In this document: positions 15,401 to 35,162 of the stretch, piece after piece
How positions within the stretch are numbered: the first letter of the stretch is position 1
Layout of the letters: each line of letters starts with the position of its first letter
Source of the DNA: Eutreptiella sp. 'Long Island Sound 2002'
Lineage: Eukaryota; Protista; Euglenida
Reading direction: 5' to 3'
DNA: 64,000 nucleotides
NCBI GenBank assembly: GCA_964036045.1
Contig: OZ038378.1
Span: 176,824,001 to 176,888,000 of the forward strand
Program-made: the position numbers and the translations under genes
Notes under the pieces: generated by a model
Databases searched by the model: none
Seen by the model: only the letters and a program-made list of their open reading frames with translations
What the model was told of the DNA's origin: nothing

Positions 15401-18351
15401 CAGCAGGAACACCCGAGCCTTTGGATCTGTTGTAGGAAGGTTGTTGCTTTCCTGCGAAAAAGGCTCCCTCCTGTGGCCTTGACCAATGAGTTCCTTGGGG
15501 GTTTTTCGCCACAGCACACGCACGGCTGGTGCGCAGGGCACGCACAAGCCCGCTATTAGGGGGGTTTTGCCTGGGCGAATATCCCATCCACCCACCACCA
15601 AGCCCAAGCATGCAAAGGTCACTAAGCTGAGCGTGAAGGTCACACAACAGTACATCATGGTTGTTCAAGTTGTCCTTTGAAAGCAACCCTTTGGCTCATT
15701 TACCGTGCACAACCTATATGGGCATGCTGAACTCATGTTGCAAATTGACATGGCATGGAATGGCCAAGTCCCAAGGCAAATTATTGCCACAACTTCCAAT
15801 TTGTCAACAGGTGGTGCCTGGCAATAACAAAATTTGGGGCAACTTTTGCCCTTTCAGATGCTTTTCCATATGGGGTTGTGCCTACAGACTGCTCAACTCC
15901 CGGAGGATGTTCCATCAAAATGTGAAGCCGGGCTGCCAAATTCACAGCCAATGTCCTGGAAAATGAGCCTCTGTCTTCCAAAGCTGATAAATTTGTATGG
16001 ATCTCTGTTGTGGGACAGCAAAGGTGTTGACTTATTGTGCAAAATGGTGACCCTGACGTTGTGCTCTGGAATAACTCCTTCCAGGGCGCTCCTCGCCAAG
16101 GCTCGTTGCCTTACCCCCTCCTCTCTGGTCACTACATCACTTGTCTGGTCCCCTCGAGTCTGAGCCTACCTTGTCCGGAGGAAGTACTGTGGGACACAAC
16201 CAAGAGGGATACTTGAACGGTGCGCAGAACTCTCCGCAGATACTCAGTTTCTTTTTTGCCATGGAGAAGGAGTGCCCTTCAGTGGGTGAAGAGAGTGAGG
16301 CACCAGGAAAAAGAGGAGTGGAGTCGAGAGAGGAATGCATGATGCAGTCAATGATGATATACAGGGACTAGCTCGTCCGGGCGTCTCCTATAGATGCGCA
16401 GCCGAAAGGCATACCCTGATGGTTGTATGTACCACTACTGGAAATCTGCGGGATTGTTTTATCAAATGGCCCAGACAGACCAGCATGAACTACCATTGCG
16501 GACCGCGGCGTGGCCATGACTCCGCTCCCTGATAGGGGCCGAAATCAGGACTGGCGGATGAACAAATTAAAAACTGAGTATCTGCAGGGAATTCAGCATT
16601 ATGTACTCCAAATGGCAAGGTGGCAGTTGGGCCGCATACACAACTCTTTTCTTTGCCAAAATAAGTGCCAACATGGGTGAGCCTAAAGTGCTTCAGAAAA
16701 TCATCAAGTTGTGGAGTGGTGTCCTGCTGCCAACCTTGAAGAACTCTGGAACAGTGAATTCAGACCACAAAAGAGAAAAGTCGGAGATGGCATCCGTGCC
16801 ACCACATCTGTTGCTCTTGACTTTTCTCCACAGTTGTGCTGTGTCCCACAATGTGCAACAACACCCAAAGGAAATGAACATTTTGAAGCTGGCCAGACAC
16901 CTGTACCTGCTCCCTTGCTCCTGTCACCTCTTCAGCTTTCTACATGATGTTGATGCCGTAGCTTTGGAATCACTGCAAAGTGGTGCCCTGAATAAGTGGA
17001 TTTTCATTACACTGAGGGCAATCTGCTGCAAGCATTCAAGCGTTCTTTATCAGTCGGAGGAGATCTTGTCAAAAGGATCCAGGACCGTTCCAGCTTAATC
17101 TCCTTGACACAAACACTGCGTATTTTGCGCAATCCTGCATCCTTCTTGAAAACACTATTTCCGTTCTGTTGAAGTGTAAGCCCTTTCATGGCAACACTGT
17201 CAATAGTGGCTTGGTTCAGGCCTCAATGGCTGCCAAAATGTTTGCGAGCAACAGCAAGTGTAGGTGTTTTGGCATTGGCGAGTAAATGGCCTGGTTTTCC
17301 ACAAATGGACAAAGGGAAACGTGTTATTTTTTGTGGTTAGGCAACAAATGGGGGGGGGGAAACCAGGGCAAGACCAGGAAAAGCCAGGGAAAAAAGGGTA
17401 AAATAAGAAAAAATGGGGATCTGGTGGTACGAAACTCAGGGAAAAATCAGGAAATTGTCTAGTTTAGCTCCAGGTAAAGTGTCCCTGTTTACTCCCCTTC
17501 CCCAAATGCATTTTTCCTTCCTTTTTCTGTCGCTCCCTCGTATACAGTCGACATGGACAATCTCTACTTTGCGGTGCACAATGGGGTTTGTTTTCCCATT
17601 TTTCTCTTCATCCTCTGAGACTCTTTCATACAACCTCCTCCCACTGAATTTTGTAGGGGTTGGAAGCGGCGGTGGGTGGCCTTCAGTTCTACTTTTTTGG
17701 CCGTGGATTTGGAGTAGAGGGTTCAATTGCCATGTGCTCACTTCCTTAGTCCACAGTGCCTACTGTCCACCCATTTCCCCCCAACATTTCTGTCAAATCA
17801 CAATTTTTGGGTGACTATTCTGGATTTTTTGGGTTTCCCAGGGGTTTGCCTGGTTTTGCCAGGGTTTGCCGGTGGTTTTGCCTGCCAGTATTGCCTGTGT
17901 GGTTCTGGTGTTGGTTTTGGTTCGGTGAGCAACAGTGATTCGGCACTGGCAACCAAGGTCTGGTGATTCAACCATGTCAAGCATACTTTGGCTGATTGAG
18001 GGGGTGGTTCGTATACTGTGGGTACTCTGTGGAATGTTCATGCACAGAGAAGCAGAGGTCAAAGATTATACTGATGTGTTAAATGGATGTACAGTGCACC
18101 AGTTCAACAGACAGAGCTTGCAGGCATTTGTGGAGAGTCATAAAAAATGCACAAGATCGAGTGTAAATGGTTCTAGAGACTCGTGTGTGATTAATGGTTT
18201 GTTGATGAGGTACCGGGGATTGTTGAAGACTGCATTGGATTGCGCACACCTGTAGAGGATTGCTAACAACCGTCAGGCGTTCATGCAGACTCAATGCTTT
18301 TTGTGCATTTGGCATGAGCCACAACTGCCTGACCTCTGAACTAGACATATC

Positions 18352-18654
18352 ATGGCTGAGCAATCATTCTTGTGCCCCATCACGTATGAGCTCATGCATG
18401 ACCCCGTGCTGCTGGCAGACGGCCACACCTTTGAGAGGTCTGCCATTGAGCAGTGGTTGCAGACAAACAACACAAGCCCCATGACCCAACTGCCTCTGGC
18501 CAACAAAAATGTGGTGCCCAACTACGCCCTTCGCATGGCAATTGAGTCCCATCTCCGTGCCAACACCATCCCATACTCAGAGCTGCAGCTTGATGGTGTT
18601 GTGGGACGTGGCTGTGACAAGACGGTCTACCGGGGCCATTGGAAGGGCAGTCAG
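18352..18654 (+). CDS. U-box/protein kinase/UBA-like gene, exon 1 (U-box and kinase Gly loop)
   Basis: FLCPITYELMHDPVLLADGHTFERSAIEQWL...SPMTQLPL...VPNYALRMAIE is a canonical U-box, followed by VVGRGCDKTVYRGHW. Donor CAG|GTGTGC at 18655, phase 0. An AG lies 7 nt upstream of the ATG, so an upstream exon or trans-splice site is possible. Confidence 0.88.
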
Positions 18655-18939
18655 GTGTGCCCTGCGCTACCCAAGGTCATTCAAGTAGGAGCAGGTGGTT
18701 GTTGGGCATCCCCCCCCCCCCCTGCATAGTAATCGCCCATGCATAGTAATCGGGGGGGGGCGACGGAACCGTCACTTTCTGTTTTGCAAATTTACGCAGA
18801 AGGTTGGATATTGAGCCTCTCCGGTGTGTTTGCTGGCTGACCAAGGTGGTATTATTGGTGCATTGCTGTGTACTTCAGGTTTCTTGCATCCAAAGCACTC
18901 CACTGTACCCTGTATCATGCAGAACACTTCAATTTTTCG

Positions 18940-19135
18940 TAATTTCAGTCATGGATTAGGCAGAAAGACAAGGTACCAAGAGATGGAACGAAAGTTTTGT
19001 GCATGGATTGTAGCATGAAGGAACAAGCGGGTCATCATGACCAAGAAGATGTGCTTGGCACTAGCCAGGAAATGGGACAGTGCATCAGACACGTTTTTGC
19101 CAACAGAAAATTGTAGTTCACGCCATGTTCCTGAG
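18940..19135 (+). mobile_element. Decayed CENP-B/Tc5-type HTH (pogo/Tigger-like transposase relic) in kinase intron 1
   Basis: GRKTRYQEMERKFCAWIVA*RNKRVIMTKKMCLALARKWDSASDTF resembles the Tc5/CENP-B HTH consensus. One in-frame stop. No DDE domain or TIRs found. Confidence 0.5.
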
Positions 19136-20474
19136 GCAAACTGCTTGCCACAGGGCTGGAGCCCCCTGCCAAGCCCCCTGCCAAACCTGCTGCCAAAGCT
19201 GCCAAACCTTGTGCCAGACCCTCCACCAAGAGTGCAGCCAAACCTGCTGCCCAGGTGGCAGCCAAGCCTGCAGCCTGCAGCTGGAGAGCCTATTCTTTTG
19301 GCCCCTGTTAAGCATGTGCAGCTCTTCAGAGTCAAATGCTCACGCCAGAGAAAGTGGCACACAGAGCCTGTCTCTCAGTAAAGCTGAGCATGTATCCCCA
19401 TCGGCAGTTTCTGGCTCATTTTATGGTTCATATACCCTTGTGTCTGCATGTCGTCGCTTGGGGTGTGTTCCCTCGGGGTGCGAGGATACCGTCGCGTGCA
19501 GGCAATTACTATGCAAGGGGAAGCGGGGGTACAGTCGTGAAATGGTGGGCACCCATCGAACAGGGCTTTTTTTTTTAGAGGACAAGTGGTGACTTGTTTG
19601 CCTTAGTCCAGTCCCTCTTTGCTTCTGTTGTTTCCCCTCTCCCCCCCCTTGCTCACCACCACATAGAACGCAAGTCAGAGGCATGCGTTGCGAACACAAT
19701 GGGAAGCACTATGATGCACCTGCAAAGCCCTAACGGTTGTCCCAGGGCAAGCTGTTTAGAGGGTGCAGGACCGCCAACGCAGTCAAGCGCTGCTGGACCC
19801 CAGCGCCCGGTGGAAGTTCGCAAAATCGGCTCACCAAGGCAGTACACCCAGAATGGACGAAAGAAAGCCGTAGTGCCATAGGACCAGTGATTCTAGTGGC
19901 CCAGCACACTCCATCGCGGCGGGGACAGTGCTTCATGCCTGCACACTCTTGCACCCACACACCAGCACAATAGAACTAGAATAGGACGTACAACTTGAAT
20001 GGTGCTTTTGCTTGAGGTGCTTTGTGTATGCACAACACAGCAGGTGGCAGGTACAGACCTGCATACATGTCAGCTGATATATTGCATCTCAGTCCTTGCA
20101 GGTGTCCACATTTGTGGACGGGCCTCACAGGCAGCTGTGGAAGCAGCCTGTGTGTATGCTAGTCACATGCACCTCAATGTGGCACTCATTGATTCTCATT
20201 TTGGTGCCAGACCCCCCCCCAAAAAAAATGAAACAAGAGCTGGTCCTTTTGGACGGCGGGGCAGCGTGATCCTGCAGGTGTGCTGTGAAATTACACACGG
20301 GACCCACCCTGGTGACCTGGAATTTCTTTCTGAACACGTGGATAAAGTTACTCAGGGGATGGGAGGAGCTTGAGGCCCGCACGCTCCCTAAGGTGGAAGT
20401 TTCCATGCTCACTGAAGCTCTGTCCACCATGCAGCAGTCCACAGTGCTGTGCTGCAACACCCCCGTCTGGCGAT

Positions 20475-20705
20475 GGGCCACGCAACAAAGCGTGGATTGT
20501 GTGAGTCCCTAACCCCAACTCAAGGGGCCACACAACAAAGCGTGGATCGTGAGTCCCTAACCCCAACTCAAGGGGCCACGCAACAAAGCGTGGATTGTGA
20601 GTCCCTAACCCCAACTCGAGGGGTCACGCAACAAAGCGTGGATTGTGAGTCCCTAACCCCAACTCGAGGGTCCACAAAACAAAGCGTGGATTGTGAGTCC
20701 CTAAC
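20475..20705 (+). repeat. 48-bp tandem array, about 5 copies (left arm of an inverted pair)
   Basis: Unit GGGCCACGCAACAAAGCGTGGATTGTGAGTCCCTAACCCCAACTC(A/G)AG. Confidence 0.92.
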
Positions 20706-21284
20706 TCACCAGGCAAGTGGAAAAAAGCCCCTCAGGGTGGGGGACAAGATCAGAAGTGGGCAACAAGTGGCGCGAAAGTTCTAAAGCCTACTTCTTTTGT
20801 TTTTGGAGGTTCTGAAACCTAGTAAAAAAAAAAAACAACTTTTGTTTTACTAGGTTCTGAAACCTAGTAAAAACAAAAACTTTTTTTACTAGGTTCCCGA
20901 TACCTAGTAAAAAATAGTGAACCTAATAAAGTGTTACCTAGTAAAAAATTTTTTTAAAAATTTTTTACCAGGTTTTACTACAGACCCCACATTAGAGTGC
21001 GGAGAGCCTAGTTCAAGGGCTCCCCTGCTGCATCGCCCATCACCTTTCGCAAGGGGATGTATGCCGTGACAACGCGGTTGTCCCCAAAAAACGCTCCACA
21101 GCCTCCGCCCTCCCAAATTCTGGGTGCAGCTCTGAGGACCCATCAGGGTACACAATCATCCATCCTTGTGCATTGTACATATCAACCACGTGGGCATGTT
21201 CCGCTCGCAGTGTGTCCGCTTGGTCAAACTTTTTTTTCTGCTTTCTTGATGGGAACCACAGATCTGGGGGGGATTGTGTTTGTA

Positions 21285-22264
21285 AGTGGGCGAGTTGGGG
21301 TTAGGGACTCGAAATCCACGCTTTGTTGCGTGGCCCATCGAGTTGGGGTTAGGGAGTCACACAATCCACGCTTTGTTGCGTGGCCCATCGAGTTGGGGTT
21401 AGGGACTCACACAATCCACGCTTTGTTGCGTGGCCCCTTGACTTGGGGTTAGGGACTCACAATCCACGCTTTGTTGTGTGGCCCCTTGAGTTGGGGTTAG
21501 GGACTCACAATCCACGCTTTGTTGCGTGGCCCCTCGAGTTGGGGTTAGGGACTCACACGATCCACGCTTTGTTGCGTGGCCCCTTGAGTTGGGGTTAGGG
21601 ACTCACAATCCACGCTTTGTTGCGTGGCCCATCGAGTTGGGGTTAGGGACTCACAATCCACGCTTTGTTGCGTGACCTGTCGAGTTGGGGTTAGGGACTC
21701 CCAATCCACAATTTGTTGCGTGGCCCCTTGAGTTGGGGTTAGGGACTCACAATCCACGCTTTGTTGCGTGGCCCATCGAGTTGGGGTTAGGGACTCACAA
21801 TCCACGCTTTGTTGCATGGCCCATCGAGTTGGGGTTAGGGACTCACACAATCCACGCTTCGTTGCGTGGCCCCTTGAGTTGGGGTTGGGGACTCACACAA
21901 TCCACGCTTTGTTGCGTGGCCCCTTGAGTTGGGGTTAGGGACTCACAATCCACGCTTTGTTGCGTGACCTGTCGAGTTGGGGTTAGGGACTCACAATCCA
22001 CGCTTTGTTGCGTGCCCCCTTGACTTGGGGTTAGGGACTCACAATCCACGCTTTGTTGTGTGGCTCCTCGAGTTGGGGTTAGGGACTCACAATCCACGCT
22101 TTATTGCGTGGCCCCTTGAGGTTGGGTTAGGGACTCCCAATCCACGCTTTCTTGCATGGCCCCTTGAGTTGGGGTTAGGGACTCACAATCCACGCTTTGT
22201 TGCGTGGCCCCTTGGGTTGGGGTTAGGGACTCCCAATCCACAATTTGCTGTGTGGCCCCTCGAG
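21285..22264 (-). repeat. 48-bp tandem array, about 20 copies, reverse complement of the 20475 array
   Basis: Unit GAGTTGGGGTTAGGGACTCACAATCCACGCTTTGTTGCGTGGCCCCTT on +. Each copy contains GGGGTTAGGG. Confidence 0.92.
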
Positions 22265-23827
22265 TCGGCGCAAATATATACTGTGCGCAATGAACATTGG
22301 GTGCTGCGCTTGTTGTTGGTTTCCCCAAGATGCACTTTTTTGTGCCTTGTTTCTGATCCGCTTTGCCCATGCCCTTAAACACAAATACCACCTACCGTTG
22401 CCCCCCCCCCCCCCCATAAACTTTGTGTTTTTTGTTCAAATTCAAGTCCAAATTTGTTACTAGCGAGTAATCTAGTAAGGAAATTTGATTAAGATTTTTG
22501 GTTTTTCTACCTAGTGAAAAAAAACGTTTAAAAAATTTTTTTAAGAAAAGTTTTTTACTAGGTTTTACTCCATTTTACTAGGTTTGACTACATTTTACTA
22601 GGTTTTACTACGGCGCATACTAGGTCTTACCAAATGCCCTCTAATGTGTCGGTAAACTAGACACCGTCAACCATAATGTGTAGTAAGGAGGGGTCACGCT
22701 ATGTAACTCCCTAATTTACAATTGAAAGCAATGGAGGACTTCGGCTGGCCATGGTTTCTAGCCCCCCGTCAGAAATCTCCCAGCAAGTAGACCATCCCCC
22801 TTATGTTGTGTGTTAGTAACCACCAAACCAGGACCTATACCCACGAGGTTTTTCAACCTAAGGACCACAAACGAGCTTGACCTATTGGGCCGAGTGGGGC
22901 CAGCCAAAGCATGCCCGTGTCAGGATTGGGCACTGACCCGGATGCGCGCACAACCTTGCAGAGCCCAAACGATCGCAACCCAAGCCACTTAGGGAGGGGG
23001 CATAGGCCAAAACACATTGGTGGACCTGAATGAATTGGAAGCTAGAGTGTGGGTAGTAGGTGGTGAAAGTTGCGGGGAGTAGGCGCGGCCAAAGCCTAAT
23101 GCAGACTTTGCAACCTTAGCATTGAGGACAGACACAAACAGGGTACGGGGACAACACCCTCACCGCTAGGCACTAACCACGGGCACGGACAACCACAGGC
23201 ATGGACAGTAGCAGTAGCAGCACACTGGGGTGCATGAGAAAGGAGTGTGAATGACACAAGCATCGCAGAAGGGAGTGTTCACGTACTGCGACCAGCAGAC
23301 TAGTGGCCCGCCAAAGCAGCTAGAGACAGGGGACGTTTGGAGGTGTTTTAGTGCTGGGCCTATGGTCTTCCTATTTTGGGATCAAAGTGGGGTGGGGTGC
23401 TGTTTCGGTGGTGCTGCCTACTGTTCAGTTGGGCATATGCACCGGGAATGAGACAGCTAGTGGTTGGTGCACTGGTGAAGGTTGCAATAATTGGCGTTTT
23501 TGTGGGTCACATGGTTTATTTGGCTGACGTCCTCTTGGCGTGTTCCGAGGCTGACCCCCTCTGCCTGTCCAACTGCATCTTGCAAACGCCCACCCACTCT
23601 CTCACTTAGGACTAGAATCCCTGTCAGCAGGGTTGGAGGGAGACTAGACTGACACCAAACAAATGGTGATGCTAGTTTTTGGGACAGCAACCCCGTGTAG
23701 CACATTCACAGTACAAAGATTGTTGTTTGCTAGGATCAGTTGACTCTGATTCCCTAGTGGGTGGACTTCTACCCCCCCCTCCCCGTTTGTGAGAGCAATG
23801 CCCTTTTCAGAGCGACACGAGGTGCTG

Positions 23828-24430
23828 TTTCCACAACTTTTGGAGGTATTGTTTCCACAGATTTTGGTACGCACAGCATGCAGGACCTAAATAGGCCGAC
23901 CTGTTTCCACAACTTTGGAACTTCCAAATTCCATGGTCCCAAAAGTTGTGGAAACAGGTCAGCCTATTTAGGTCCTGCACGCTGTGCGTACAGGGGTTAG
24001 CACAGAAGCAGGACGTGGCAGAGCCACCGTGCCGCCCCCCAAGCCTCACCCTTAGTGTACACGGCGCGAGAGAAGGACCCGCGCCAAGGGCTCAGGTGTC
24101 TTCGCTGTTGGCCCGTCCGTGCCCCTTGCCCGGGGTCTCTGCTCCTCTCGGGGGTGTAGGCTCTCTCCCCGTACCCTCAGGCTCTCTCCCCGTACCCTCA
24201 GGCTCTCTCCCCGTACCCTCTCCAAAAGTTGTGGAAACAAAGTAGCCGATACAGCGTGCAGGACCATAATCGGCTACTTTGTTTCCACAACTTTTGGAGT
24301 GAGGCTTGGGGGGCGGCACAGTGGCTTTGCCACGTCCTGCTTCTGCGCTGACCCCTGTACACACAGCGTGCAGGACCTAAATAGGCTGACCTGTTTCCAC
24401 AACTTTTGGAACAATGGAATTTGGAAGTTC
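23828..24430. repeat. Nested inverted-repeat element (foldback/MITE-like)
   Basis: About 23905-24050 is the reverse complement of about 24295-24430. Internal hairpins at 23880-23985 and 24220-24298 are built from TTTCCACAACTTTTGG/CCAAAAGTTGTGGAAA. A 21-bp unit occurs x3 at 24160-24220. Confidence 0.8.
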
Positions 24431-24820
24431 CATTTTCTGGTGGTCCCCTCCCTTACATCTATCATGCCCCATTCTTCTCCTTGCTTTATTTTCATAGAAT
24501 GTGCATCAAATGTCTCACTGCTTGTGTCTTCTGGCAGCGCATGCAGACACTGCTCTTGTCAGAGCGATAAATTCCGCCAAATTTTAGAGTTTTGGTGTTG
24601 CTCTTGCAATGGGCCGCGGGGGGGGGGGGGCTCCTCCTCTGCTTTCATACCGCAAGGAAGGCCCCCTCACCATGGTCAGGCCCCACAGTTTGTGGTACCT
24701 CAATTGAAGATGTTTATGGTGACATTCGGATTTGTCATGCCCTGTTCCTGTGGAAATGCTTCGTTGCCCCAGCCAATCCTTTTGCTGAGCTTTTCTCCGA
24801 CTCAGCATCACCCTCTTCAG

Positions 24821-25051
24821 GTCGCGGTGTTGCAGTTTTCATCCCTAATCTGCGACACAGAGTTCGCACTGATGCAGAGACTAGGCATGCACCCGAACGT
24901 GGTTGCGGTGCATGGCAAAACCTGCAGCCCTGAGGGGAAGCATGGCATCGTCTGTGAATTTGCAGCCCTGGGCTCTCTCGATGCAGTACTGGATCAACAC
25001 CGTGAACCCCATTGTATTGCAGTCGCAGTGAAGCTGGAGATAGCCATGCAG
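24821..25051 (+). CDS. U-box kinase gene, exon 2 (kinase subdomains II-V)
   Basis: ccctcttcAG acceptor. Reads VAVLQFSSLICDTEFALMQRLGMHPNVVAVHG...IVCEFAALGSLDAVL...KLEIAMQ. Donor GTGTCT at 25052. Both ends phase 0. Confidence 0.88.
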
Positions 25052-25285
25052 GTGTCTGCCCCAGCGTCTGCCTCCATACCACACACACCACAAGCAGGGG
25101 TGGCACAGAGGTTTTGTGTACCACATGAGCCAGGCCTGACGACATGGGATCTGCCCATGCCAGCCTCGCAAGCACTCGACTTCCGATGACCTTCGACTTT
25201 CTTTTGGAATCTCCATCACCCCCCCCCCCCCCTTTGCTGCAATCCAATTCAATTGGTGGAGCCCCCCCGAAATAATTCGCACAAC

Positions 25286-25291
25286 ACACGC

Positions 25292-25361
<70 letters not shown>
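25286..25361 (+). repeat. (CA)n microsatellite
   Basis: Direct read. Similar (GT)n tracts at 3866-3905, 45581-45617 and 46343-46418. Confidence 0.95.
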
Positions 25362-25366
<5 letters not shown>

Positions 25367-27488
25367 ACATCCTTCCGCCCTCCCAGTCGAGAACCGAGAT
25401 ATGTGCCCGCAGGTGCTGGGCTTCCACTGCAGAGGGGGGTCATTAGAGTTTTGGGGGGATCCTGTCAATTGAGCTTTTGGGATGTCCAGCCATTCCCCCC
25501 CCCCAAAAAAAATTGAAGTCCGCCTTCCCCTTGCTTCCGCTGCATCATCCAGTGCTCATGGGCTTCGGCTCTCACAGCATAGTGGTGCGTGGGCCAAGGC
25601 ATCGGTACATCATGATGTTGGTGACAGCGCAGTGGCACATTGAAGTGTGTTTGTGGTCAAGCCATTGCTTAGTGAGGAATCCCCCCCCCCCCCGCTCTTG
25701 CTTCAGAGGATGTTGCAGCTGCCCCCATATGATGAGGATCACTTATGGGCAGCACATGTCTGCTCATGCCTGCTGTGAGGTTGTGATGACCAGTTATGGG
25801 TGAGCCAAAGCCCTTGCCCACTTTGATGACAAGTTCTGGGCTAGCCAAAGCCCCCAGCCTAACATGTGTTGATGTAGCAGTTTTTCGAGCTGTGTCCACA
25901 ATCTGTCGGCGTTGGTTCTGGAGCTGTCATCAGTGTCAGAAGGTGACCCACAACCGGTCTCAGATTTTGACTCAGTGTTTAGTTACACAGTTCTGGGCTA
26001 GCCAAAGCCCCCAGCCTGTCCTCTGCTAATGAAAAGTTATGGGCTTGCCAGCACGTGAGTTGAGGGTCAAGGTGCTCTCATCAGTACCAGATAGTCAAAT
26101 GTGGAACATAGTGGAAGAGGCGCTTTTCTGGTTGGGGAATAGGGTGCAGTGGAGATATCCAGGTGGCAGTGGTGTGCTCCGCTGAGAATGGGTGTGGGGA
26201 CCACTGTGGCAGTGGTGTGCTGAGCTGCGAAGAGTGAGGAAGGGACTACCATTACATCAAATGGTTCGATACAGGGGCACACATGGTACATCAGGTGCTC
26301 CATAGCCTTTGGGGCTGTAGGGGGCGCCGGAGCGGAGGGGATGCCGCAAAGGCTGAGTGAGCATGCCGGTTTGTACTCCCGGGTGTACGTACATGTCGCC
26401 TTCTTAAGCTGTTGAAGGAGGGAATCCTCCATGCGTGGATAGGTGGGTTGGTTGTCCACCCAGTGGGTTAGGGTCGAAATGAGCGCGTTCAAAAATTGCG
26501 AGAGGTGGGGAGCCTGCTCATGGTGCCACCGTGATGATGTCCCCATTTTGGAACACCCACCCACTGGCATCATGACTTTGGGGGCTGGCGTCTGGCATTT
26601 TGCCTCCCGCTCTCAACTAGAATGTACACAAAAGACGGCACAAAAAAGCATGTTGGGATCCATTGCTTTTTACAATTCGGGGGTTCATGCAATGTTTGTG
26701 ATGTGCTGCAAAGCCACCAGAGGCATGGGTACTAAATTTGCACTAGCTCTCCCTGGTGAGGTAATGTTTATGGTATGCTGCAACTCTTCTCAGAGAGACA
26801 CTGATGACAGCTCAAGTTCCAACTCCTCGTCATCTTGTGATATGGAAGAGGTTTGACGAACTGTGGCCAAGGCTCGAAAAACTGCAGAGCAGCTGACTGT
26901 GCCGCACATTGTTGTGAATCAAAATGGATGCAGCGTGGGTGTAGTGCCTGTCCTTGTGCCTGAATGAGGGGGGTCTGTGGTGTACTGTACCGGGTTTTCG
27001 GTGAGCCCTGTTTTTTGTGAATTGTAAACCATCAAAGGAGCCCCCCCCCCCCCTTTTTCCCATCCCTGGTATGTGACAGGTATGTGCAACAGGGCAAGGG
27101 TTCGCAATGAGGATGGGGAGGCGCCAGCCTTGCTAAGCGACCCCCATGGCCCATGATGCTGCGGGTGATGGTTGATGCTGCCAGGGTGGCGTTGTGGCTG
27201 GCTGCTCGTTTGCGTGTTGTTTTGGAGGAGTTGTTGTGCCACCTCACTGATGACCAAGGCCATAACCAATGCACAGCTATGGACCAGATAGAATCCCTGA
27301 TTTCTGGGACCTTCCACAGCGCGGCCTACACCCCCGAAAAAGTCGTCAACCCACCAGTCTCCACCCACTGCCTTCCCCTCCCCTCACCACCCCCCCCCCG
27401 CCGTTCACCAACCCGTCACCGTATGGGCAATACAGATAGATGTTAATGCTTGGCCGGGCACAATCCAATTCACACACTAATGGTGCAG

Positions 27489-27815
27489 GTATGTGAGGCT
27501 ATGGAAGCGCTGGCTGAGGGGGGCATCATCCATCGTGACATCGCAGCACGAAATGTCTTGGTATCTGAGTTCCACCGGCACCTTCCCTCCGCCGTCCACG
27601 TCAAAGTGACGGACTTTGGCCTAAGCAGACCCGGATCCGTGTACTACAGCCAGGCGCAGCGCCTGCCCTTTCGATGGATGCCCCCAGAGGCGCTGCTGAG
27701 ACGCAAATTCAGCGAGAAAAGTGACGTATGGGCGTGGGGAGTACTGCTGTGGGAGCTGTTCAGCGGGGGACTGGTACCGTTCGCTTTTGTGGACGATGAG
27801 GATGTTTGTGACAAA
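27489..27815 (+). CDS. U-box kinase gene, exon 3 (kinase subdomains VI-IX)
   Basis: VCEAMEALAEGGIIHRDIAARNVLV...VKVTDFGLSR...LPFRWMPPEAL...KSDVWAWGVLLWELFS. AG at 27487-27488, donor GTGTGT at 27816. Confidence 0.92.
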
Positions 27816-28469
27816 GTGTGTTATTGTCGTCGGTGGTGGTGGTTGTATTGGTGCTCGTGTCCGCGTTGATGAACAATTTCTTGGTGGTGCGCTGCACTAA
27901 GCGTTACACTAGCAGTGAAAATTGTCACGCAAGCACTGAAAAGCGTCATGCGAGCGCTCGCACCCGCATTGCAGAATCATCCACACCACATAATTACAGA
28001 ATTAGAATCAAAATTAGCATTACAATCAAGACAAACGTGATGCAAGCGTTCAGCAGAAAGGTTATCGAATTAAGCGTCACGGGAGTTTATCCTCATTTCT
28101 ATAATATATTCGACATTACACGCGGAGATAGGTGGGGCTTTTGAGACAATTCAGGACACACACACCCTTATTGGAGTTAGCGGAGACAAAGCAAAGTGTT
28201 TTAAAGGTTTTTTGGATGACTAGGGTGGAGTGTTGGCGCCCACCAAGGAGTACGAAGGGCAACAAAACAGAGGTGACATCACTGCTCTGATCCTATCCAA
28301 ACTACTAGAAATGGCTATGGCCATTTTACCATAAAAGGTTGCCCAAAGGAGAATTGTGGTTGTCGTCAGCGAAGGAACCAAAAGGCATTATGAATGATTG
28401 AGCATAAGTAAGAGGTTGGCATCCCTTCTTTTCCCGTGTGGCCCCCATCTCTCGCACTGCGCTCTGCAG

Positions 28470-28712
28470 GTCTGTGGTGGTAGACGACTGCTCTGTCCTG
28501 ATGGGTGTCCTGACATGGTCTACAGCATCATGCAGGATTGTTGGCATCACGATCCCATGGACCGCCCATCCTTCAGGCAATTACGTTTCAGGCTCAAAGA
28601 AACCCAGTCCACATTGGCCACACAGGCTGCCTTATCGGAGCAAGAAATCCGCCTGCAACAGCGCCTGGAGGCTGCAGCCAGGCAGGCAGATGCTCAACAA
28701 GTGCACATTGAG
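28470..28712 (+). CDS. U-box kinase gene, exon 4 (kinase X-XI and coiled coil)
   Basis: VCGGRRLLCPDGCPDMVYSIMQDCWHHDPMDRPSFRQL, then a Q/E/A-rich helix. gctctgcAG acceptor, donor GTGAGA at 28713. Confidence 0.88.
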
Positions 28713-30890
28713 GTGAGAACTATCCCATCCCCATGTACCTTGTTCCTGTCACTCGCCTTCTGCATTCCCTGCGTCTTTCTCTCTGGAACACACAAGGAAC
28801 AGGGAGCGGGGAAGCCGAAGGGGAAAGGTGTGGAGGAGCAAGAAGCGTGGGGGCATCCATGACTGGGCTTGCCGGCCATGCACAGGGGCATCCTTGCTCG
28901 TGTGCATCTATCTGTCCTCTGATGACTCTCCCACCTCAATCCTCCCTCTCCCACCTCATCTCTGCCTCATACCTCCTCCGTCAGCCCACCTCCTTCATGC
29001 CTTTCGCTCCTGCCTCGATCCCCCCCCCCCCCTAATATCTTGCTGGACCATTTGGGCCTCCATGGTATGCAGGACCGAAGTCCATTTAGGGCAAAGTTGG
29101 TATGGGCATTGCTGTAGGCCTGATGAATTGTGAACTTTCGGTTGCTTCTGGGCAAGGAAGCAAGGGCGTTTTATCAGATAACAATTAATCAAGCCTCTGT
29201 GCCACATTGGGCAAAACCTAGGACATACAAGTGAACCTCCATAGGCATGGCCCACCAAAAGGCACGGCACTCAAGCCAATTAGGCCGCATGGATGGTAAC
29301 TTCACCCAGTCAAGTAAATCGGGAGTCTTGGGGGGAGAGGTCGAGATGGAGCTAGTGCAAAGGTGAATGAAGATAAAATAAACTCAAAACAAAGCACGGT
29401 GCACGACCCTATGAAAAAAAATTCATGTTGCTGATGGCATCCGACCTTACAATACTGTGCCATCCATGATGTCTTTGTCTACAAGAATAGAAACATGCAT
29501 GTGGTGTGCCTCCAGAAAAAAACGGGTACCTGGCTGCGCACGACGTGGCATGTGTTGTATGTTGCATGGCAGTTGATTTTTTTTTTTTGATGGAACTGGG
29601 GTTTTGTTTGCACACACTAGATTTCCACGCTGATCATGCATCTTCCAGATCCATTTCTTCGCAAATTTGGTTTTCCCAATCTCATCGTGTGGCCAGTCAA
29701 CATCGCCACCAGCGAAAAAATAAGCAAAAGACAAGCTATGCATGTTCCCATGGCACTAAATCACCATAGAACACCTTGGACACTAATGCAGTTCAAGTTC
29801 AATGGAGTATGAATTCAGTCTGATGATGTTCTCAGTCAAGATTTGACAACTGAAATCACGCAGTGGACTTGCTTCAATTTACCTCTTGGAGTGCTCTTGG
29901 ATCCCAGAACATAAGTGTATCACCAAAGTTCAGATTGGTGATCCTTGACATGGAGCCCATGAATTGATACACTGTTTGCCAAAATCACATCCAGAAAGAT
30001 ACCGATTGGCCTGTGGGAATGAGGACAACAATACAATGGGGATTATATGGCATGCAAAGAATATACACCATAATCTCACCTACAATATCGTCTGTCTCAT
30101 GATCACGCCCAGCTATCTCCATGGCAGCTCTACATTACTGTAGGATTAGAAACACTTAATCCCCTCACACTGGGGAAGTTGGGTTTTCAACTCCGTTGGG
30201 GAGGGGGTCTATTGAGGGTCTACTGAGGGTAGGGGGATACAGGAAAAGGGCACAATTGACACGACCAGTAATCAGTTATTATGAATTCTGGTGCTGCAAA
30301 TCGAGCACTGAAAGTTGTCATTTTTTTTACCACATACATGGCAAATGATGAGTTTTCTGAATCCCCTCGACGCGCTGATTCCAAAAATCTCATTTTTATT
30401 TTCCCCTATATTTGGGTCTGGGTCACCTCCGGGGCCCACGGGTTAGTCTTGGTAGGATTTGGGGGGGGGGGGGGGGCTGTCAACTGAGCCCTTTTTGGGG
30501 GAGGGGGCGGGGTCCGCTTGTTTATATTTTTTTGCTTCCTGAATTTTTGCTTGCTTATATGCGGAACACCCCCTGTTTTCACGGCAGAAAAATGGCTCTC
30601 CCTGACACCAATGACCCCCACTTCTTTTATGATGACATCGCAGCAGCCCGAAAGGAGGATGAAGTGGTTGTTTAGGATTTTTGTCAGGGTGCGACAGATG
30701 TTGAGCACACAGGCAGCATTTGTGCACAATCAAATGAAGGCGTAGCACAACATGCAATTGGAGATGCCTCTTTTCTCTGTTTTTTATCTTGCCTCTGGGG
30801 TCGCCATTTGCCATGTGCGTGCTTTTATTTTGGTGCTTGCTTCCATTTTTTTTGCGGGGGGTATGCCATTCATATCTTTCTGTGCCTCAG

Positions 30891-31263
30891 GAGCTGAGGC
30901 AGCGCCTGGAGAATTTGCAGCGGGAGCGCAAGGGACTTGAGGGCAGTGGCCCTCCCTCTTCCGATGCCCTGCAGCGGGAATGTCAGGGATGTAAGAGCAG
31001 CGGGCCTCCCCCCACGGAGCGCCTACAAAGTGGACAGGTCGGCCCTGAGGCTACTGGTGCCCCAGTTTCAGACCGTGTGCCTCCGGAATGCGACGGCCCT
31101 GAGGCCAGGGGTGTACTGCAGCACGTGGCGGAGCATTGGGTCCCGAAGATGACGGCGATGGGTTTTGCAGAGGCCGCAGTGCGCCACGAGTTGTCCACAG
31201 AGCCCATGTGCCAGAGCGTTGAGGAGCTGGTGTCCCGCATGGTGGAGCGCCCAGCGAGTGCAG
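30891..31263 (+). CDS. U-box kinase gene, exon 5 (coiled coil, linker, UBA-like domain)
   Basis: tgtgcctcAG acceptor, phase 0. Reads ELRQRLENLQRERK...KMTAMGFAEAAVRHELSTEPMCQSVEELVSRMVER, with an MGF UBA-type motif. Probable phase-1 donor GTACAG at 31264. Confidence 0.72.
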
Positions 31264-32881
31264 GTACAGCCCCGGATGCCCATTTCGCAAACAGCGTGTC
31301 AATTGAACATTCGCAACCATTTTCAAGCCTTCCACACCTGCATGGACGGCGTTTGGGCTGGGCATGCCGATCAGATTGTCGTCGCATATCAAAATTTCAT
31401 GCGGCACCCGCGCTGTCCACCAGCTGCACGATTGGGGTTAGGGACTCCCTGTCGCTCCGGGCTGAAGGTGCAGAACCCCAGCCCCTGGAGTCCCTGCCGT
31501 TCGTTGTGGAAGTTTGGTCAGGGATTTTCCCTGTTGGTGCTACGTCCATCATTGGGCCGACCAGTTCCCGGCAGAAAGCAGCTCACTGGACGTTCCAAAG
31601 TTTGGGGACCCGTGGTGTTGGCTTGCAGTTACGGCGGGTGCGGCAAACCTCTGGGGGGGGGATATCGCATCCACTTAGCTTGGGCTGGGGGAGGGGGGAG
31701 GTTACGTGCAGGGGCGCAGGTCCACTGGCTGTTGGTGACAGCAGCAGTGATGAGGGGTCCCTCCTAGACAAGGAGGAATGCATTCCGCATCTTCTGGTGT
31801 GTGCGTGTGTGTGGGGGTAGATAGGACAGAGGAAGCAGGCCGTTGCTTAGTGCACCCCCCAACCCCCACCCCACCCACCCACCCACCCACAGAGGGGATG
31901 GGTTGGATGCCAAAACATTCGGTGTATCTGAAATTGGCCTCCAATTCGTGCTCTTTGAGGAAATTCCAAACTTTTTCTGACGCAAAAGTTTCTGATGGGT
32001 CGGCGGGTTGGTCGGCTGCGGTTGGCCCGCCCCAAATGCCCCCCCCCCCCCCCCGCTGGATCCTTTAGCAATGAAGGCAATTTCAGAAAGGCTTCCAGGT
32101 TCTTCACAGCTGCTGATCGCAGTTCTCTGGTGCGTCTTTCGAAACACAGTGCATTCACTCTGTGCTAGCATGTCAATAACAAACATTGCCTAGCCAGACC
32201 ACCAATGTTTTGGCTGTCAGTCTCGACACACTCACTGGAGTCAGGCACTTCATTTGTGCTTCTGGAAGTGTAAATTCCTCATTTGATGCCTGCATAAGGC
32301 CAAGTTTTTTTTCCCCTGGGCGTGCGCCTCAATCAATGGTTTGGCCCTTGCTTTTGCCCAAACACGGATACTGTCTTCAGGCACACCCCTTAGAATTGAG
32401 CTTTCTGGCCAAGCGCTGAGTGAATGTCGGGTTTGAAATGTAACATCAGAACCTGTAGAGCTGTTTTGTGAACAGTGCATTTCTCAGTGTACATGTGTAA
32501 GAATATTATGGGACGTGCATGTCCGAGAACATGTAGTCTTGGAAGTATAGGGTGCAGGCTGTCCGGTAAAACACCATTTGGGTCTCTGTGATGGCCTCTC
32601 CTGAAAGGACTGTGGTCAAGGATGAAATGTTGCTTTGCTCTTCTTCCAGAAGACCTCAGCACAAGCCCTGAATTGGACGTTTCAGAATCAGCAAAGAGAA
32701 AAGATCGATCGGAGCAGGTCTGTGAGCTCGCAGTTGTTGTGATACCCAGCAACGCCTCACAGTGGACAGAATTGGGGACACAGAGACAAGAGTGAGAATC
32801 ATTTGCTTCAATGTACACGCCTGCACCAACTCCTGCATTCCCCCCACGCCCACCCCACCCCCACCCCTTCGCGCTACTTAG

Positions 32882-32986: not shown

Positions 32987-35162
32987 GTGTGTGCCTATTT
33001 CCCGACCCCAAGCTTGTGTGACATGAAGCCCCTACCCAATGCATGGCACTCGAACTTGCCCACAAAGTATGTCAATGTTGTTGTTTGTGAAAAAATTATT
33101 CGCACGGACCTCTCTAACATGCGTCGCACAAAGTCTTTCGCAAGATGGTGAAGTTTGGATGGTGCTCTCCACCACATCTGATGTGGGAAATGCAACACAA
33201 GCCCAGGGAGTTCTGGGTCACAGGTGCTGCACATCAGTGGTGTGCAGCATTTCTAGGCATTTGCCTTTTGTAGAAAGGTAAAGGTGGCGCAGCACTGTGG
33301 CCCATGGTATCATGTTGAGTAAGTGTCAAAACAGAGGACTCCCCAGTCCGACATCATGAGCATGGCAAGGATCCTGGACCAGTGACGTAATACGGTGTTT
33401 ATCTGCGTGCGCATGTATGTGACCACCACGTCCCAAAGTGGTCCGACAATTGCGGTCTGTTGTACCATTGGCGCAGGGGCCATGCTACACCACATGGCAC
33501 TGGTCGTTGCTGGTATTACAAAGCCAGCAAAGAACACAACCTGTTGGCAAGCGGCAGCAGCACAAGTGTAGCGGATGAGGAACCCGTGGCTATTGTTCAC
33601 CATTGTGGCAACCATGGCAACATGGCTGGGTGCCTATCCTACAGCAAATGGTTGGCTCTTCTGGTACGCCCTGGTTTTCGTTTTGAGGAGGAAATTGTCT
33701 ACCTTGGTTGTCTCAAGCCACTAGGGAAAAGTATCGTTGGCAGGTGAGAGTGGGACAGATGTCCCTCTGCTCACTAGTGTTGCTTCTGCCCCTTGGCATC
33801 CCTCTCATGCCGCCGCCGACACTCTTCGCCCACATACATTCTCTTGACAGCGAAGTTTAGAGGGCGCTTGCCACCACTGATGCGGGACACGGAATACAAG
33901 GTTCTGCATCTGCATCTGTTACCCGCCAATGGCGCACATCATTTCCATGCTGTTGGTTTTTTTTTTCATTGTTCCGATGTGCCGACAGCGCCAGCACTTA
34001 GATGGGGTCACAACTCCAGCGAAGGCGGATTGGCTCCGCCGAAGCGAGCTAACAAGGCCACAGCTCTTTTGTTGGGCGGACTGGACGAGCCATACGCCAG
34101 CAATGGCGTCACTCTCTGTGTGTGTTGGGGGTTGATGCGGGCCCTTGTTGTCTCAGGATTTCACCCCGTCATTGCCGTGCCCCTCACCCCGTCGGCTTCT
34201 CCACCCATGCGTGGTGTAGCTCACTGGACCTTCCGAGGTTTGGGGACCGCTGCCGTCTTCTCGCCCCCCCCCCCCCCCCCCCGCCCCTTGGCATCTCCCA
34301 CCTGCGGTACAACGGTGTCCGGGGAAAATCAGCACCTGTGAGCAAAGGGACAAGGCATCCCACTCTCACATCCCAGAAATATGTTCCCTCACCGTCTGTG
34401 GGCAAACCATGCGGTCGATTTCCTGAAAAGTGGAACCCATGTGCACACGCGGAATCACCAAGCAGCACACTGGACCTCTATGGCAGCCCCCCCCCCCCCC
34501 AGCATCCGCCCTACATCTGGTGTTCAGAACAGATCGACTGTCGTTGCATGTCAACAGGCGCACAACAACGAAGTGCAAGGTGAGCCATGCAATGCGTTGC
34601 ACACTGGTGCACAAGGCAGAGGCATAGGTAGCCACAATGACTCTGTCAAATGAAGCGCCGCATGAACATCTGGAGGATGCCGCTTGGGAAGCCCCGAGGG
34701 CAGTGGGGTGCGATTGTGCTTGCATTCCCGGGGGAACACCTTTTGCCCAGTCGGCATGAGACATGCGACCCGTGTGAATTGGATGGCGTTCTGTGTGTTG
34801 TAGCGGGTGCCCAGGGCATCGGTCCATTGGTGTGCCTTCGGCGTCTGAAGCGTGGGCTCTGCGCGCGAGACGTGTACCAGGGCCGTCCAGTGGTACAGTA
34901 ACAAAGCCAAGGGGACCCTCCGCGAACGCAGTCCCCTTGCACTTCTTCACCTGCGTTTCGTAGGAGACCCGAGCCAAAAAGCCCCGGCACGCCCCCGCTC
35001 TCGGTCCCTCTGCAGCAGAGCCCGCGCCGCCCTTTGGGACCCCACCGTCTCTGTCAAACACCCATCCCGACTGCAGTGCTCAGCACTCCCCCACTGATTC
35101 CGCCTTCAACACAGTCAAGCCGAGCCCAGGCCCTATCCCCAGCACCCAAGGCGTCGTCAGTG

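What the first reader, a model, noticed from the sequence alone, without database searches (positions are those of the whole stretch)
18352..31263. U-box kinase with a tyrosine-kinase catalytic loop and a WNK-like relocated lysine
Seen: beta-3 reads VAVL instead of VAVK, while the Gly loop reads GRGCDKTVY. HRDIAARN, DFG, LPFRWMPPE and the alpha-C Glu are intact. Established: WNK kinases lack the beta-3 Lys and use a Lys at this Gly-loop position (GRGSFKTVY). HRDxAARN and P.RW are tyrosine-kinase-type signatures. Inference: an independent WNK-style lysine swap in a TK/TKL scaffold, fused to an E3 U-box and a UBA-like domain. This would be one polypeptide that writes phosphate and ubiquitin and binds ubiquitin. 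I do not know of this combination as a described family.
Basis: partly seen in the sequence, partly recalled or inferred. Interest (0 to 1): 0.8.

Follow-up and report, generated by a model that had tools for sequence, protein, structure and literature searches.

The report
U-box kinase with relocated catalytic lysine
A transcribed euglenid gene encodes a ubiquitin-ligase (U-box) domain fused to a tyrosine-kinase-like domain whose ATP-anchoring lysine appears to have moved to the glycine loop, as in WNK kinases, and it belongs to a widespread protist family with that arrangement for which I found no description in the literature.

Summary
RNA contigs and a metatranscriptome mRNA contig verify a six-exon GT..AG gene (18344-35097, + strand, 536 aa).

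The mRNA carries GRGCDKTVY (Lys90 at the third Gly position) and beta-3 VAVL (Leu105). The alpha-C Glu, HRDIAARN, DFG and PFRWMPPE are intact.

The swap is a family trait. In 59 relatives plus this gene the loop Lys is invariant (60/60) and none has a beta-3 Lys. Catalytic residues are kept far better than in relatives lacking both lysines.

With the two trait regions removed, these domains form one clade (SH-aLRT 99), sister to animal tyrosine kinases plus conventional protist relatives. PDB matches are ABL/ITK/BTK and, for the N-lobe, TAK1/CTR1/MLK. No WNK is listed among the best matches.

47 of 59 carry a U-box or RING. Named members come from cryptophytes, a green alga, Telonema and a colpodellid.

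The "UBA-like" domain is unproven. Kinase activity, use of Lys90 and substrate specificity are inferred.

Reviews list only WNK and POMK for this lysine migration. I found no paper on this family.

The parts
18344..18351 (+). 5' UTR after the trans-splice acceptor (AG at 18342-18343). The mRNA carries the spliced-leader tail TTTTTTCG in front of it.
   Evidence: L001 bases 1-8 are TTTTTTCG and its match to the window starts at 18344. The E. gracilis spliced leader ends in TTTTTTTTCG (PMC6242988).
18352..18654 (+). Exon 1 coding part, residues 1-101: start ATG, U-box (18364-18564), a short linker, then kinase beta-1/beta-2 with the Gly loop GRGCDKTVY (18604-30; Lys90 at 18619-21).
   Evidence: Pfam U-box E 1.3e-22. 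DNA read. GT donor at 18655. Identical to proteins P0001 and P0002.
24821..25051 (+). Exon 2, residues 102-178: beta-3 VAVL (Leu105 at 24830-32), alpha-C Glu115 (24860-62), and the N-lobe through the hinge.
   Evidence: DNA read. The X4 loose end at 24817 equals the end of exon 1, and the joint 25046>27484 (cut +5) is GT..AG. L001 alignment. Pfam PK_Tyr_Ser-Thr.
27489..27815 (+). Exon 3, residues 179-287: catalytic loop HRDIAARN (27531-54), DFG (27612-20), an activation loop with Tyr230-Tyr231, and PFRWMPPE (27666-89).
   Evidence: DNA read. Pfam E 2.3e-35. RNA joints. Best PDB sequence matches are a two-stretch EGFR chain, then CSK, BTK and ABL.
28470..28712 (+). Exon 4, residues 288-368: the end of the kinase domain (CW..DP..RPSF, to about 28610) and the start of a coiled-coil helix (from about 28644).
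   Evidence: DNA read. Joint 27815>28470 is GT..AG in four runs. AF2 gives the helix pLDDT above 90.
30891..31263 (+). Exon 5, residues 369-492 plus one base: the end of the coiled coil (to about 30941), a Pro/Gly/Ser-rich linker, and a three-helix 'MGF' segment (about 31098-31250) that is only possibly UBA/CUE-like.
   Evidence: The loose end after 28713 equals the start of exon 5. L001 alignment. Weak domain evidence: Pfam E 0.21, Atlas features 0.83, AF2 pLDDT 69, no significant fold match.
34964..35097 (+). Exon 6: the last 44 codons (an Arg/Ser/Pro-rich tail) and the stop TGA at 35095-35097.
   Evidence: L001 bases 1491-1623 match window 34962-35094 at 100%. AG acceptor at 34962-63 and the stop codon are read. 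ORF end.

Best explanation
This is a real, trans-spliced and transcribed euglenid gene of six exons. It encodes a 536-residue protein laid out as: N-terminal U-box, tyrosine-kinase-like kinase domain, coiled coil, linker, small helical module, basic tail.

The kinase belongs to a large clade of protist TK-like kinases. In that clade the ATP-anchoring lysine sits at the third glycine position of the Gly loop (GxGxxK, strand beta-2), and the canonical beta-3 position is Leu or Met.

Shown:
- the gene structure and its expression;
- the motifs;
- clade membership;
- invariance of the loop Lys together with absence of a beta-3 Lys;
- retention of the catalytic residues;
- the frequent fusion of this kinase type to U-box or RING domains.

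Inferred:
- Lys90 pairs with alpha-C Glu115 and positions the ATP phosphates, as the beta-2 Lys does in WNK1, so the domain is an active kinase.
- HRDIAARN, P-x-R-W and the Tyr-Tyr pair in the activation loop suggest tyrosine or dual specificity, with activation-loop autophosphorylation.
- The U-box recruits a ubiquitin-charged E2.
- The coiled coil dimerises the protein.
- Phosphorylation and ubiquitination are therefore coupled on one polypeptide, either on shared substrates or as mutual self-regulation.
For: Gene model and expression:
- Spliced RNA contigs from four runs match with no mismatches, and the exon 1 to exon 2 joint is recovered.
- The mRNA contig L001 spans all six exons and carries a spliced-leader tail.

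Domains:
- U-box at E 1e-22, and PK_Tyr_Ser-Thr on exons 2-4.

Family trait:
- Alignment of homologues.
- Loop Lys 60/60; beta-3 column L49 M6 S3 A1 V1.
- Non-redundant co-variation table, Fisher 2e-41.
- Catalytic residues kept in the K-relocated set: alpha-C Glu 61/64, HxD 57/64, Asn 62/64, DxG 62/64. In domains lacking both lysines the figures are 30, 21, 29 and 18 of 37.

Phylogeny:
- With the Gly-loop and beta-3 columns dropped, one clade with SH-aLRT 99 holds all 59 members and the window's kinase. It is sister (96) to animal tyrosine kinases plus conventional protist AARN kinases.
- The one clade member with a loop Gly (P0285, also U-box) has its beta-3 Lys back.

No WNK link found:
- N-lobe versus PDB gives TAK1, CTR1, MLK and ZAK.
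- The family profile versus PDB gives ABL, ITK and BTK at 1e-66 to 1e-75.

E3 link:
- U-box in 36/59, RING in 11/59, ubiquitin domain in 7/59.

Precedent:
- A beta-2 Lys supports catalysis in WNK1 and POMK (PMC13519141, PMC10211241).
Against: - No biochemical or structural test exists for any member.
- I could not measure the Lys90-Glu115 geometry, because the tools return no coordinates and I did not fold a joined model.
- This gene is a divergent member (end branch 0.79 against a median of 0.46).
  - Its loop reads C-D where the family has S-F.
  - It lacks the Arg found three residues after the beta-3 Leu in 45/60 members.
  - Some loss of activity in this particular copy is therefore possible.
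- The Fisher test is not corrected for shared ancestry. The relocation may be a single event, plus one to three exceptions whose position (nested or basal) the AU test cannot resolve (p 0.18).
- One mRNA contig (L001) carries a premature stop at 25004. Two other RNA data sets have the intact codon.
Confidence: 0.7

Rival explanations
1. Pseudokinase. Loss of the beta-3 Lys killed catalysis. The domain survives as a nucleotide-sensing or scaffolding module that regulates, or gives substrate specificity to, the attached U-box/RING ligase. The loop Lys is conserved for another reason, such as nucleotide or partner binding without phosphotransfer.
For: By the usual sequence definition, a kinase without the VAIK lysine is classed as a pseudokinase (PMC13519141). 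The window's copy has an unusual loop (C-D in place of S-F) and a long branch. No activity data exist.
Against: The catalytic Asp, Asn, DxG Asp and alpha-C Glu are kept in 57-62 of 64 K-relocated domains. In relatives lacking both lysines the HxD Asp (21/37) and the DxG motif (18/37) are kept in only about half, the Asn (29/37) and alpha-C Glu (30/37) in about 80%. The loop Lys is invariant at exactly the position used catalytically by WNK. The family member with a loop Gly has the beta-3 Lys, which fits a need for one lysine or the other.
Confidence: 0.18
2. Active kinase, but the loop Lys is not the ATP-anchoring residue. Another basic residue near beta-3 does that job: the Lys/Arg one residue after the Leu in some members, or the Arg three residues after it in most. 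The loop Lys has a different role, for example gamma-phosphate or substrate contact.
For: Arg three residues after the beta-3 Leu is present in 45/60 members, and Lys/Arg one residue after it in 23/60. P0077 and P0332 lack the loop Lys and have Lys or Arg one position after the beta-3 column.
Against: Neither of those positions is conserved the way the loop Lys is (60/60). The window's own protein has Gln and Ser there (VAVLQFS), yet keeps every other catalytic residue.
Confidence: 0.07
3. A true WNK relative, or a WNK N-lobe grafted onto a tyrosine-kinase C-lobe. The shared GRGSFKTVY-type loop would then reflect common descent rather than convergence.
For: The loops are strikingly alike.
Against: The N-lobe alone matches the TKL kinases TAK1, CTR1, MLK1, ZAK and DLK in the PDB; no WNK is among the 60 matches listed out of 141 found at E up to 1. 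The whole-domain profile matches ABL, ITK and BTK. The clade is sister to tyrosine kinases on a tree built without the loop columns. The catalytic loop is HRDxAARN. No WNK sequence could be placed in the tree, so this rests on PDB rankings.
Confidence: 0.03
4. Gene-model or assembly artefact. The Gly loop and the VAVL strand would not be part of one mRNA, or the locus would be a dead copy.
For: A 6.2-kb repeat-rich intron separates them. An alternative in-frame AG lies 15 nt downstream. L001 has a premature stop.
Against: RNA contigs join 18654 to 24821 and carry all exons without mismatches in independent runs. The codon at 25004 is intact in X1 and X4. All six exons keep one open frame of 536 codons.
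Confidence: 0.02

Closest known systems
WNK kinases (WNK1-4)
   Same: There is no Lys in beta-3. A Lys sits at the third Gly position of the Gly loop (strand beta-2), within a near-identical local motif (G-R-G-x-x-K-T-V-Y). The alpha-C Glu, HRD and DFG-type motifs are kept.
   Different: - Different kinase group. The catalytic loop is HRDIAARN and the P+1 loop is PFRWMPPE, both tyrosine-kinase-type.
- Nearest solved sequences are ABL/BTK/CSK and TAK1/MLK, not WNK.
- The beta-3 residue is Leu or Met, not Cys.
- DFG/DYG replaces WNK's DLG.
- It is fused to U-box or RING.
- No evidence of chloride sensing.
POMK / SGK196
   Same: It is the second known case of the VAIK lysine migrating to beta-2 with activity retained (PMC10211241, PMC13519141).
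   Different: POMK is a glycan kinase with divergent HRD and DFG equivalents, and its Lys pairs with an Asp. This family keeps canonical HRD, DFG and the alpha-C Glu, and looks like a protein kinase.
Animal and holozoan cytoplasmic tyrosine kinases (ABL, BTK/ITK, CSK, Src)
   Same: They are the best sequence matches for the whole domain profile (E 1e-66 to 1e-75). They share HRDLAARN, P-x-R/K-W-x-x-P-E, tandem Tyr in the activation loop, and CW..RPxF in subdomain XI. They are the sister group on the tree.
   Different: They have canonical GxGxFG and VAVK, and SH2/SH3 accessory domains. They are opisthokont, whereas this family is found in euglenids, cryptophytes, green algae, Telonema and colpodellids. 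Tyrosine specificity is untested here.
Plant U-box (PUB) proteins with kinase domains, and MEKK1 (both named from my own knowledge, not tested here)
   Same: One polypeptide combines a protein kinase domain with a RING/U-box-type E3 domain.
   Different: As I recall, in the plant PUB-kinases the kinase precedes a C-terminal U-box and is an RLK/Pelle-type Ser/Thr kinase with a normal beta-3 Lys. MEKK1 is a STE-group kinase with a PHD/RING-like domain. Here the U-box is N-terminal, about 10 residues from the kinase, and the kinase is TK-like with a beta-2 Lys.

Membership tests
U-box E3 ligases (PF04564) | A U-box fold signature over about 70 residues, scoring above the curated cut-off | tested here: met
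   80.1 bits against a cut-off of 21.4, E 1.3e-22, covering profile positions 4-71 of 73. The CPI, DPV, GHTFER, I..WL and PNYALR motifs are visible in the translation.
U-box E3 ligases (PF04564) | E2-dependent ubiquitin ligase activity | not testable with these tools
   Needs an in-vitro ubiquitination assay.
Eukaryotic protein kinase, TK/TKL type (PF07714) | A complete kinase domain with the HRD Asp, catalytic-loop Asn, DFG Asp and alpha-C Glu | tested here: met
   Pfam hits on exons 2-4 cover profile positions 50-256. The HMM alignment of the mRNA translation spans residues 73-334. Glu115, Asp195, Asn200 and Asp220 are present.
Eukaryotic protein kinase, TK/TKL type (PF07714) | Canonical beta-3 (VAIK) lysine | tested here: not met
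   The beta-3 strand reads VAVL (Leu105) in both DNA and mRNA.
Tyrosine kinase group (TK) | HRDxAARN catalytic loop and a P-x-x-W P+1 loop | tested here: met
   HRDIAARN and PFRWMPPE are present. Nearest PDB sequences are tyrosine kinases. The clade is sister to animal tyrosine kinases on the tree.
Tyrosine kinase group (TK) | Phosphorylates tyrosine | not testable with these tools
   Needs phospho-amino-acid analysis.
WNK family | Lys in beta-2 (third Gly position of the loop) with no beta-3 Lys | tested here: met
   GRGCDK plus VAVL. This shows what it works like; it does not show descent.
WNK family | The kinase domain groups with WNK/NRBP by sequence | tested here: not met
   No WNK chain appears among the 60 PDB matches listed for the N-lobe (141 found at E up to 1), the C-lobe, or the family profile. 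The catalytic loop is tyrosine-kinase-type. No WNK sequence was available to put in the tree.
Beta-2-lysine, E3-linked TK-like kinase clade of protists (defined here) | Falls inside the clade on a tree built without the trait columns | tested here: met
   The clade holds 59 members plus the window's kinase, with SH-aLRT 99. Best identity is 49%, to Tetraselmis P0253.
Beta-2-lysine, E3-linked TK-like kinase clade of protists (defined here) | GxGxxK loop, non-Lys beta-3 residue, and a fused U-box or RING | tested here: met
   Lys90, Leu105 and an N-terminal U-box. Across the family: Lys 60/60, beta-3 Lys 0/60, E3 domain in 47/59.
UBA / CUE ubiquitin-binding domains | A significant match to a UBA/CUE profile or fold | tested here: inconclusive
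   - Pfam UBA_N4BP1: E 0.21 over 15 residues.
- PDB by sequence: only designed helical proteins.
- Atlas features: top hits are UBA clusters, but the score is 0.83, which is a lead only.
- AF2 on the isolated piece: three helices at pLDDT 69.
- Foldseek: nothing below E 4, with one UBA at rank 5.
- VIA-align: Z at most 5.1, with CUE domains tied among generic helical bundles.

The most novel reading that the evidence does not exclude
This clade is a third, ancient and independent invention of the beta-2 catalytic lysine, this time in genuinely tyrosine-phosphorylating kinases outside the opisthokonts. As in WNK, moving the lysine would free the beta-3 pocket for a small regulatory ligand such as an anion or osmolyte. 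These proteins would then couple an ionic or metabolic signal to phosphorylation and, through the hard-wired U-box/RING, directly to ubiquitination.
Probability: 0.1. Interest if true: 0.9.

Novelty: new variant of a known kind. Interest (0 to 1): 0.74.

Why it matters
Recent reviews call the WNK lysine placement "unique" (PMC13686953) and list only POMK as a second case (PMC13519141, PMC10211241).

Here the same relocation is fixed in a whole clade of otherwise canonical, tyrosine-kinase-like domains.

- There are at least 59 clusters at 50% identity among the best 150 matches.
- Named members come from distant eukaryotic lineages.
- One close relative has swapped back to loop Gly plus beta-3 Lys.

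This offers three things:

1. A natural replicate for asking why a kinase moves its lysine, and what the move costs or allows.
2. A warning that motif-based pipelines will class these proteins as pseudokinases.
3. A recurrent hard-wired kinase-E3 fusion (80% of members) in which phosphorylation-ubiquitination coupling can be studied on one polypeptide, in algae that can be cultured.

It also bears on whether tyrosine-kinase-type enzymes existed widely outside animals and their relatives.

Tried and rejected
- **Alternative acceptor.** An in-frame AG 15 nt downstream of 24820 would delete VAVL. Rejected: the RNA loose end and L001 both use 24821.
- **Missing mini-exon carrying a VAVK strand in the 6.2-kb intron.** Rejected: the mRNA contigs join exon 1 directly to exon 2, and the family has the same short beta-3 to alpha-C spacing.
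- **WNK descent.** No support found.
- **UBA domain.** Tested with Pfam, PDB sequence search, Atlas features, two AF2 runs, Foldseek and VIA-align. All were weak.
- **Homologues of the C-terminal 168-190 residues.** None found apart from the window's own ORF.
- **Whether the three clade members without a loop Lys are nested reversions.** AU test p 0.18, so unresolved.
- **Literature.** Nine full-text searches and seven papers read found no description of this family.
- **Exon 1 homologue search.** It returned only the gene itself and two U-box-only proteins, because of the tool's length window.
  - The window's protein was searched exon by exon, or as the two natural pieces of L001.
  - Only in local scripts was the L001 reading frame used whole, with X at its one internal stop.

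Full report
**1. The observation**

The window is eukaryotic, about 53% G+C with long repeat-rich introns.

- An ATG at 18352 on the + strand opens a frame. It encodes a U-box (Pfam PF04564, E 1.3e-22) and then, without interruption, the start of a kinase domain with the Gly loop GRGCDKTVY.
- Further kinase pieces lie in frames at about 24.8, 27.5 and 28.5 kb. They match PK_Tyr_Ser-Thr profile positions 50-105, 105-217 and 215-256.
- The piece at 24821 begins VAVLQF, and an alpha-C Glu follows in CDTEFALM.
- HRDIAARN, DFG and PFRWMPPE are at 27531-27689.

**2. The gene model**

The claim depends on exon 1 being spliced to the acceptor at 24820/24821. A second in-frame AG 15 nt later would remove VAVL. 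RNA data decide this.

- Four runs held about a third of the words of a test stretch, which is the exonic share. Two are estuary metatranscriptomes; two are probable RNA runs labelled with a single organism.
- Contigs from these runs lie on exons 2-4 without a mismatch.
- They show GT..AG joints at 25051|27489 and 27815|28470.
- In run X4, the letters preceding 24817 are the last 30 bases of exon 1 minus the shared TCAG. The joint is therefore 18654|24821, and VAVL is in the mRNA.
- The letters following 28713 are the start of exon 5.

An exon 1 protein search found a 162-residue JGI protein identical to exon 1 plus exon 2. Its 1623-nt metatranscriptome contig, L001, aligns to the window as six blocks:

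| Exon | Window coordinates |
|---|---|
| 1 | 18344-18654 |
| 2 | 24821-25051 |
| 3 | 27489-27815 |
| 4 | 28470-28712 |
| 5 | 30891-31263 |
| 6 | 34964-35094 (contig ends here) |

- The genome continues with TGA at 35095-35097.
- L001 starts with TTTTTTCG, joined 8 nt before the ATG. This is the tail of the euglenid spliced leader (ACTTTCTGAGTGTCTATTTTTTTTCG in Euglena gracilis, PMC6242988).
- L001 has one difference that creates a stop (G25004T). Two other RNA data sets carry the intact GAA.

**3. The swap is a family trait**

Searching with the natural C-terminal piece of L001 returned many unnamed protist proteins from ENA, JGI, Logan and EukProt. They combine PK_Tyr_Ser-Thr with U-box, RING or ubiquitin domains. 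Animal CSK, ALK and FGFR-type kinases ranked just behind.

- Aligning their N-lobes showed that almost all the protist proteins read [GA]xG[SA]xK..V in the Gly loop and VAV[LM] in beta-3.
- Conventional relatives and animal tyrosine kinases read GxGxFG and VA[VI]K.

I built a profile of 16 such domains and searched it against 1.84 billion representatives.

- The best single-domain hits were again K-loop/non-K-beta-3 proteins.
- Over 340 non-redundant complete N-lobes the counts are:

| Gly-loop position | Beta-3 position | Count |
|---|---|---|
| K | not K | 64 |
| K | K | 1 |
| not K | K | 238 |
| not K | not K | 37 |

- Fisher's test gives 2e-41. It is not corrected for ancestry.
- In the curated set of 59 members plus this gene, the loop Lys is 60/60 and the beta-3 column is L49 M6 S3 A1 V1.

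**4. Active kinase or pseudokinase**

K-relocated domains keep their catalytic residues far better than domains with neither lysine:

| Residue | K-relocated (of 64) | Neither lysine (of 37) |
|---|---|---|
| Alpha-C Glu | 61 | 30 |
| HxD Asp | 57 | 21 |
| Catalytic-loop Asn | 62 | 29 |
| DxG | 62 | 18 |

That contrast, the invariance of the Lys, and the WNK1 and POMK precedents make an active kinase using Lys90 the best reading. It remains an inference.

This gene is a somewhat divergent member. Its loop reads C-D where the family has S-F, it lacks the common Arg three residues after the beta-3 Leu, and its branch is 0.79 against a median of 0.46.

**5. Relationships**

- A maximum-likelihood tree of 106 domains, built with the Gly-loop and beta-3 columns removed, puts all 59 K-relocated domains and the window's kinase in one clade (SH-aLRT 99, stem 0.53).
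- That clade is sister (96) to animal tyrosine kinases plus conventional protist HRDxAARN kinases. HRDLKxxN TKL kinases lie outside.
- Three U-box kinases without a loop Lys fall in the same clade.
  - P0285 has loop Gly with beta-3 Lys restored.
  - P0077 and P0332 have loop Asn with Lys or Arg one position after beta-3.
  - Whether they are nested or basal is unresolved (AU p 0.18). Either way the two sites change together.
- No WNK link was found.
  - The N-lobe matches TAK1, CTR1, MLK1, ZAK and DLK.
  - The C-lobe matches CSK, BTK and ABL.
  - The family profile matches ABL, ITK, BTK and a reconstructed Src-Abl ancestor at 1e-66 to 1e-75.
  - None of these lists of best matches includes a WNK.
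- The window's kinase groups (support 87) with a sub-clade that includes the Tetraselmis protein. Many members of this sub-clade share a YY or YYY motif in the activation loop, as many tyrosine kinases do.

**6. Architecture and spread**

- Of the 59 members, 36 have a U-box, 11 a RING (zf-C3HC4_3) and 7 a ubiquitin domain. The U-box is N-terminal, directly before the kinase, in the members examined individually.
- C-terminal parts vary: ARM, LRR, PARP, UCH-like, ubiquitin.
- Named members:
  - Rhodomonas salina and Hemiselmis rufescens (cryptophytes);
  - Tetraselmis sp. GSL018 (green alga; UniRef name "C-src tyrosine kinase");
  - Telonema subtile;
  - Alphamonas edax (colpodellid).
- Many more come from Tara and other marine assemblies.

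**7. The C-terminus**

- Residues 346-385 form a confident long helix (pLDDT above 90), taken as a coiled coil.
- The "UBA-like" segment, with an MGF motif and three predicted helices, has only weak support:
  - Pfam E 0.21;
  - language-model neighbours are all UBA clusters, but at a score of 0.83;
  - AF2 pLDDT 42 in context and 69 in isolation;
  - no significant Foldseek hit;
  - CUE domains only tied among generic helical bundles at Z 4.3-4.5;
  - no PDB sequence match to any ubiquitin-binding domain.
- The region has no homologues in the protein collection.

I treat it as possible, not shown.

**8. Mechanism proposed**

Everything in this section is inferred.

- The U-box recruits an E2 charged with ubiquitin.
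- The adjacent kinase binds ATP with Lys90 (beta-2) paired to Glu115.
- The coiled coil dimerises the protein, which would allow trans-autophosphorylation on Tyr230/231.
- Phosphorylation and ubiquitination then act on common targets or on each other.

**9. Novelty**

- Reviews from 2023-2026 name only WNK and POMK for beta-2 lysine migration, and one calls the WNK placement unique.
- Nine full-text searches found nothing on this family. only confirmed the spliced-leader sequence.
- The proteins exist unremarked in databases.
- I class it as a new variant of a known kind: an undescribed family of atypical kinases, a probable third independent case of the relocation, tied to E3 domains.

**10. 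Limits and compliance**

Searches used single exons or the two natural pieces of L001.
- In local scripts the L001 frame was read with X at its stop.
- As a result, there is no fold of the window's complete kinase domain.

Noticed in passing
window 20475-20705 and 21291-22265 (intron 1); a fragment near 31425-31450: A 48-bp satellite forms two arrays in opposite orientation inside intron 1 (4.8 and 20 copies, 90-93% matches), with a 340-bp higher-order period in the larger array. A short piece of the same unit lies just downstream of exon 5.
   Followed up: no
window 25280-25362 (intron 2): A (CA)42 microsatellite. Read laying skipped it as a repeat.
   Followed up: no
window 26360-26760 and 30160-30560 (introns 2 and 4): RNA contigs from all four runs lie here at only 90-95% identity, with loose ends on both sides and high summed depth. 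These look like dispersed repeats transcribed from other loci, not exons of this gene.
   Followed up: partly
window 25004 (exon 2); L001 bases 502-504: The JGI metatranscriptome contig carries T where the window has G. This turns Glu163 (GAA) into a stop. RNA contigs from X1 and X4 carry the intact codon. It is either an assembly error or a null allele in the population.
   Followed up: partly
protein P0146 (in the cluster of P0046): A U-box-kinase of this eukaryotic family is deposited at NCBI as 'MAG: protein kinase, partial [Promethearchaeia archaeon]'. The rest of its 90% cluster comes from marine eukaryote-like contigs, so it is probably eukaryotic contamination of an Asgard bin.
   Followed up: no
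proteins P0198, P0199, P0202, P0211 and others: Very long proteins carry 4-10 tandem kinase-like domains. P0198 is 2911 aa with 10 stretches. Most of the domains are degenerate (HGNLS.., NFS, GGG) and one or two are intact. These are unexplained tandem kinase/pseudokinase arrays, or merged gene predictions.
   Followed up: no
family alignment, column three residues after the beta-3 Leu: An Arg is present in 45/60 K-relocated domains (VAVLxxR) but is absent from the window's protein (VAVLQFS). Its role is unknown.
   Followed up: partly
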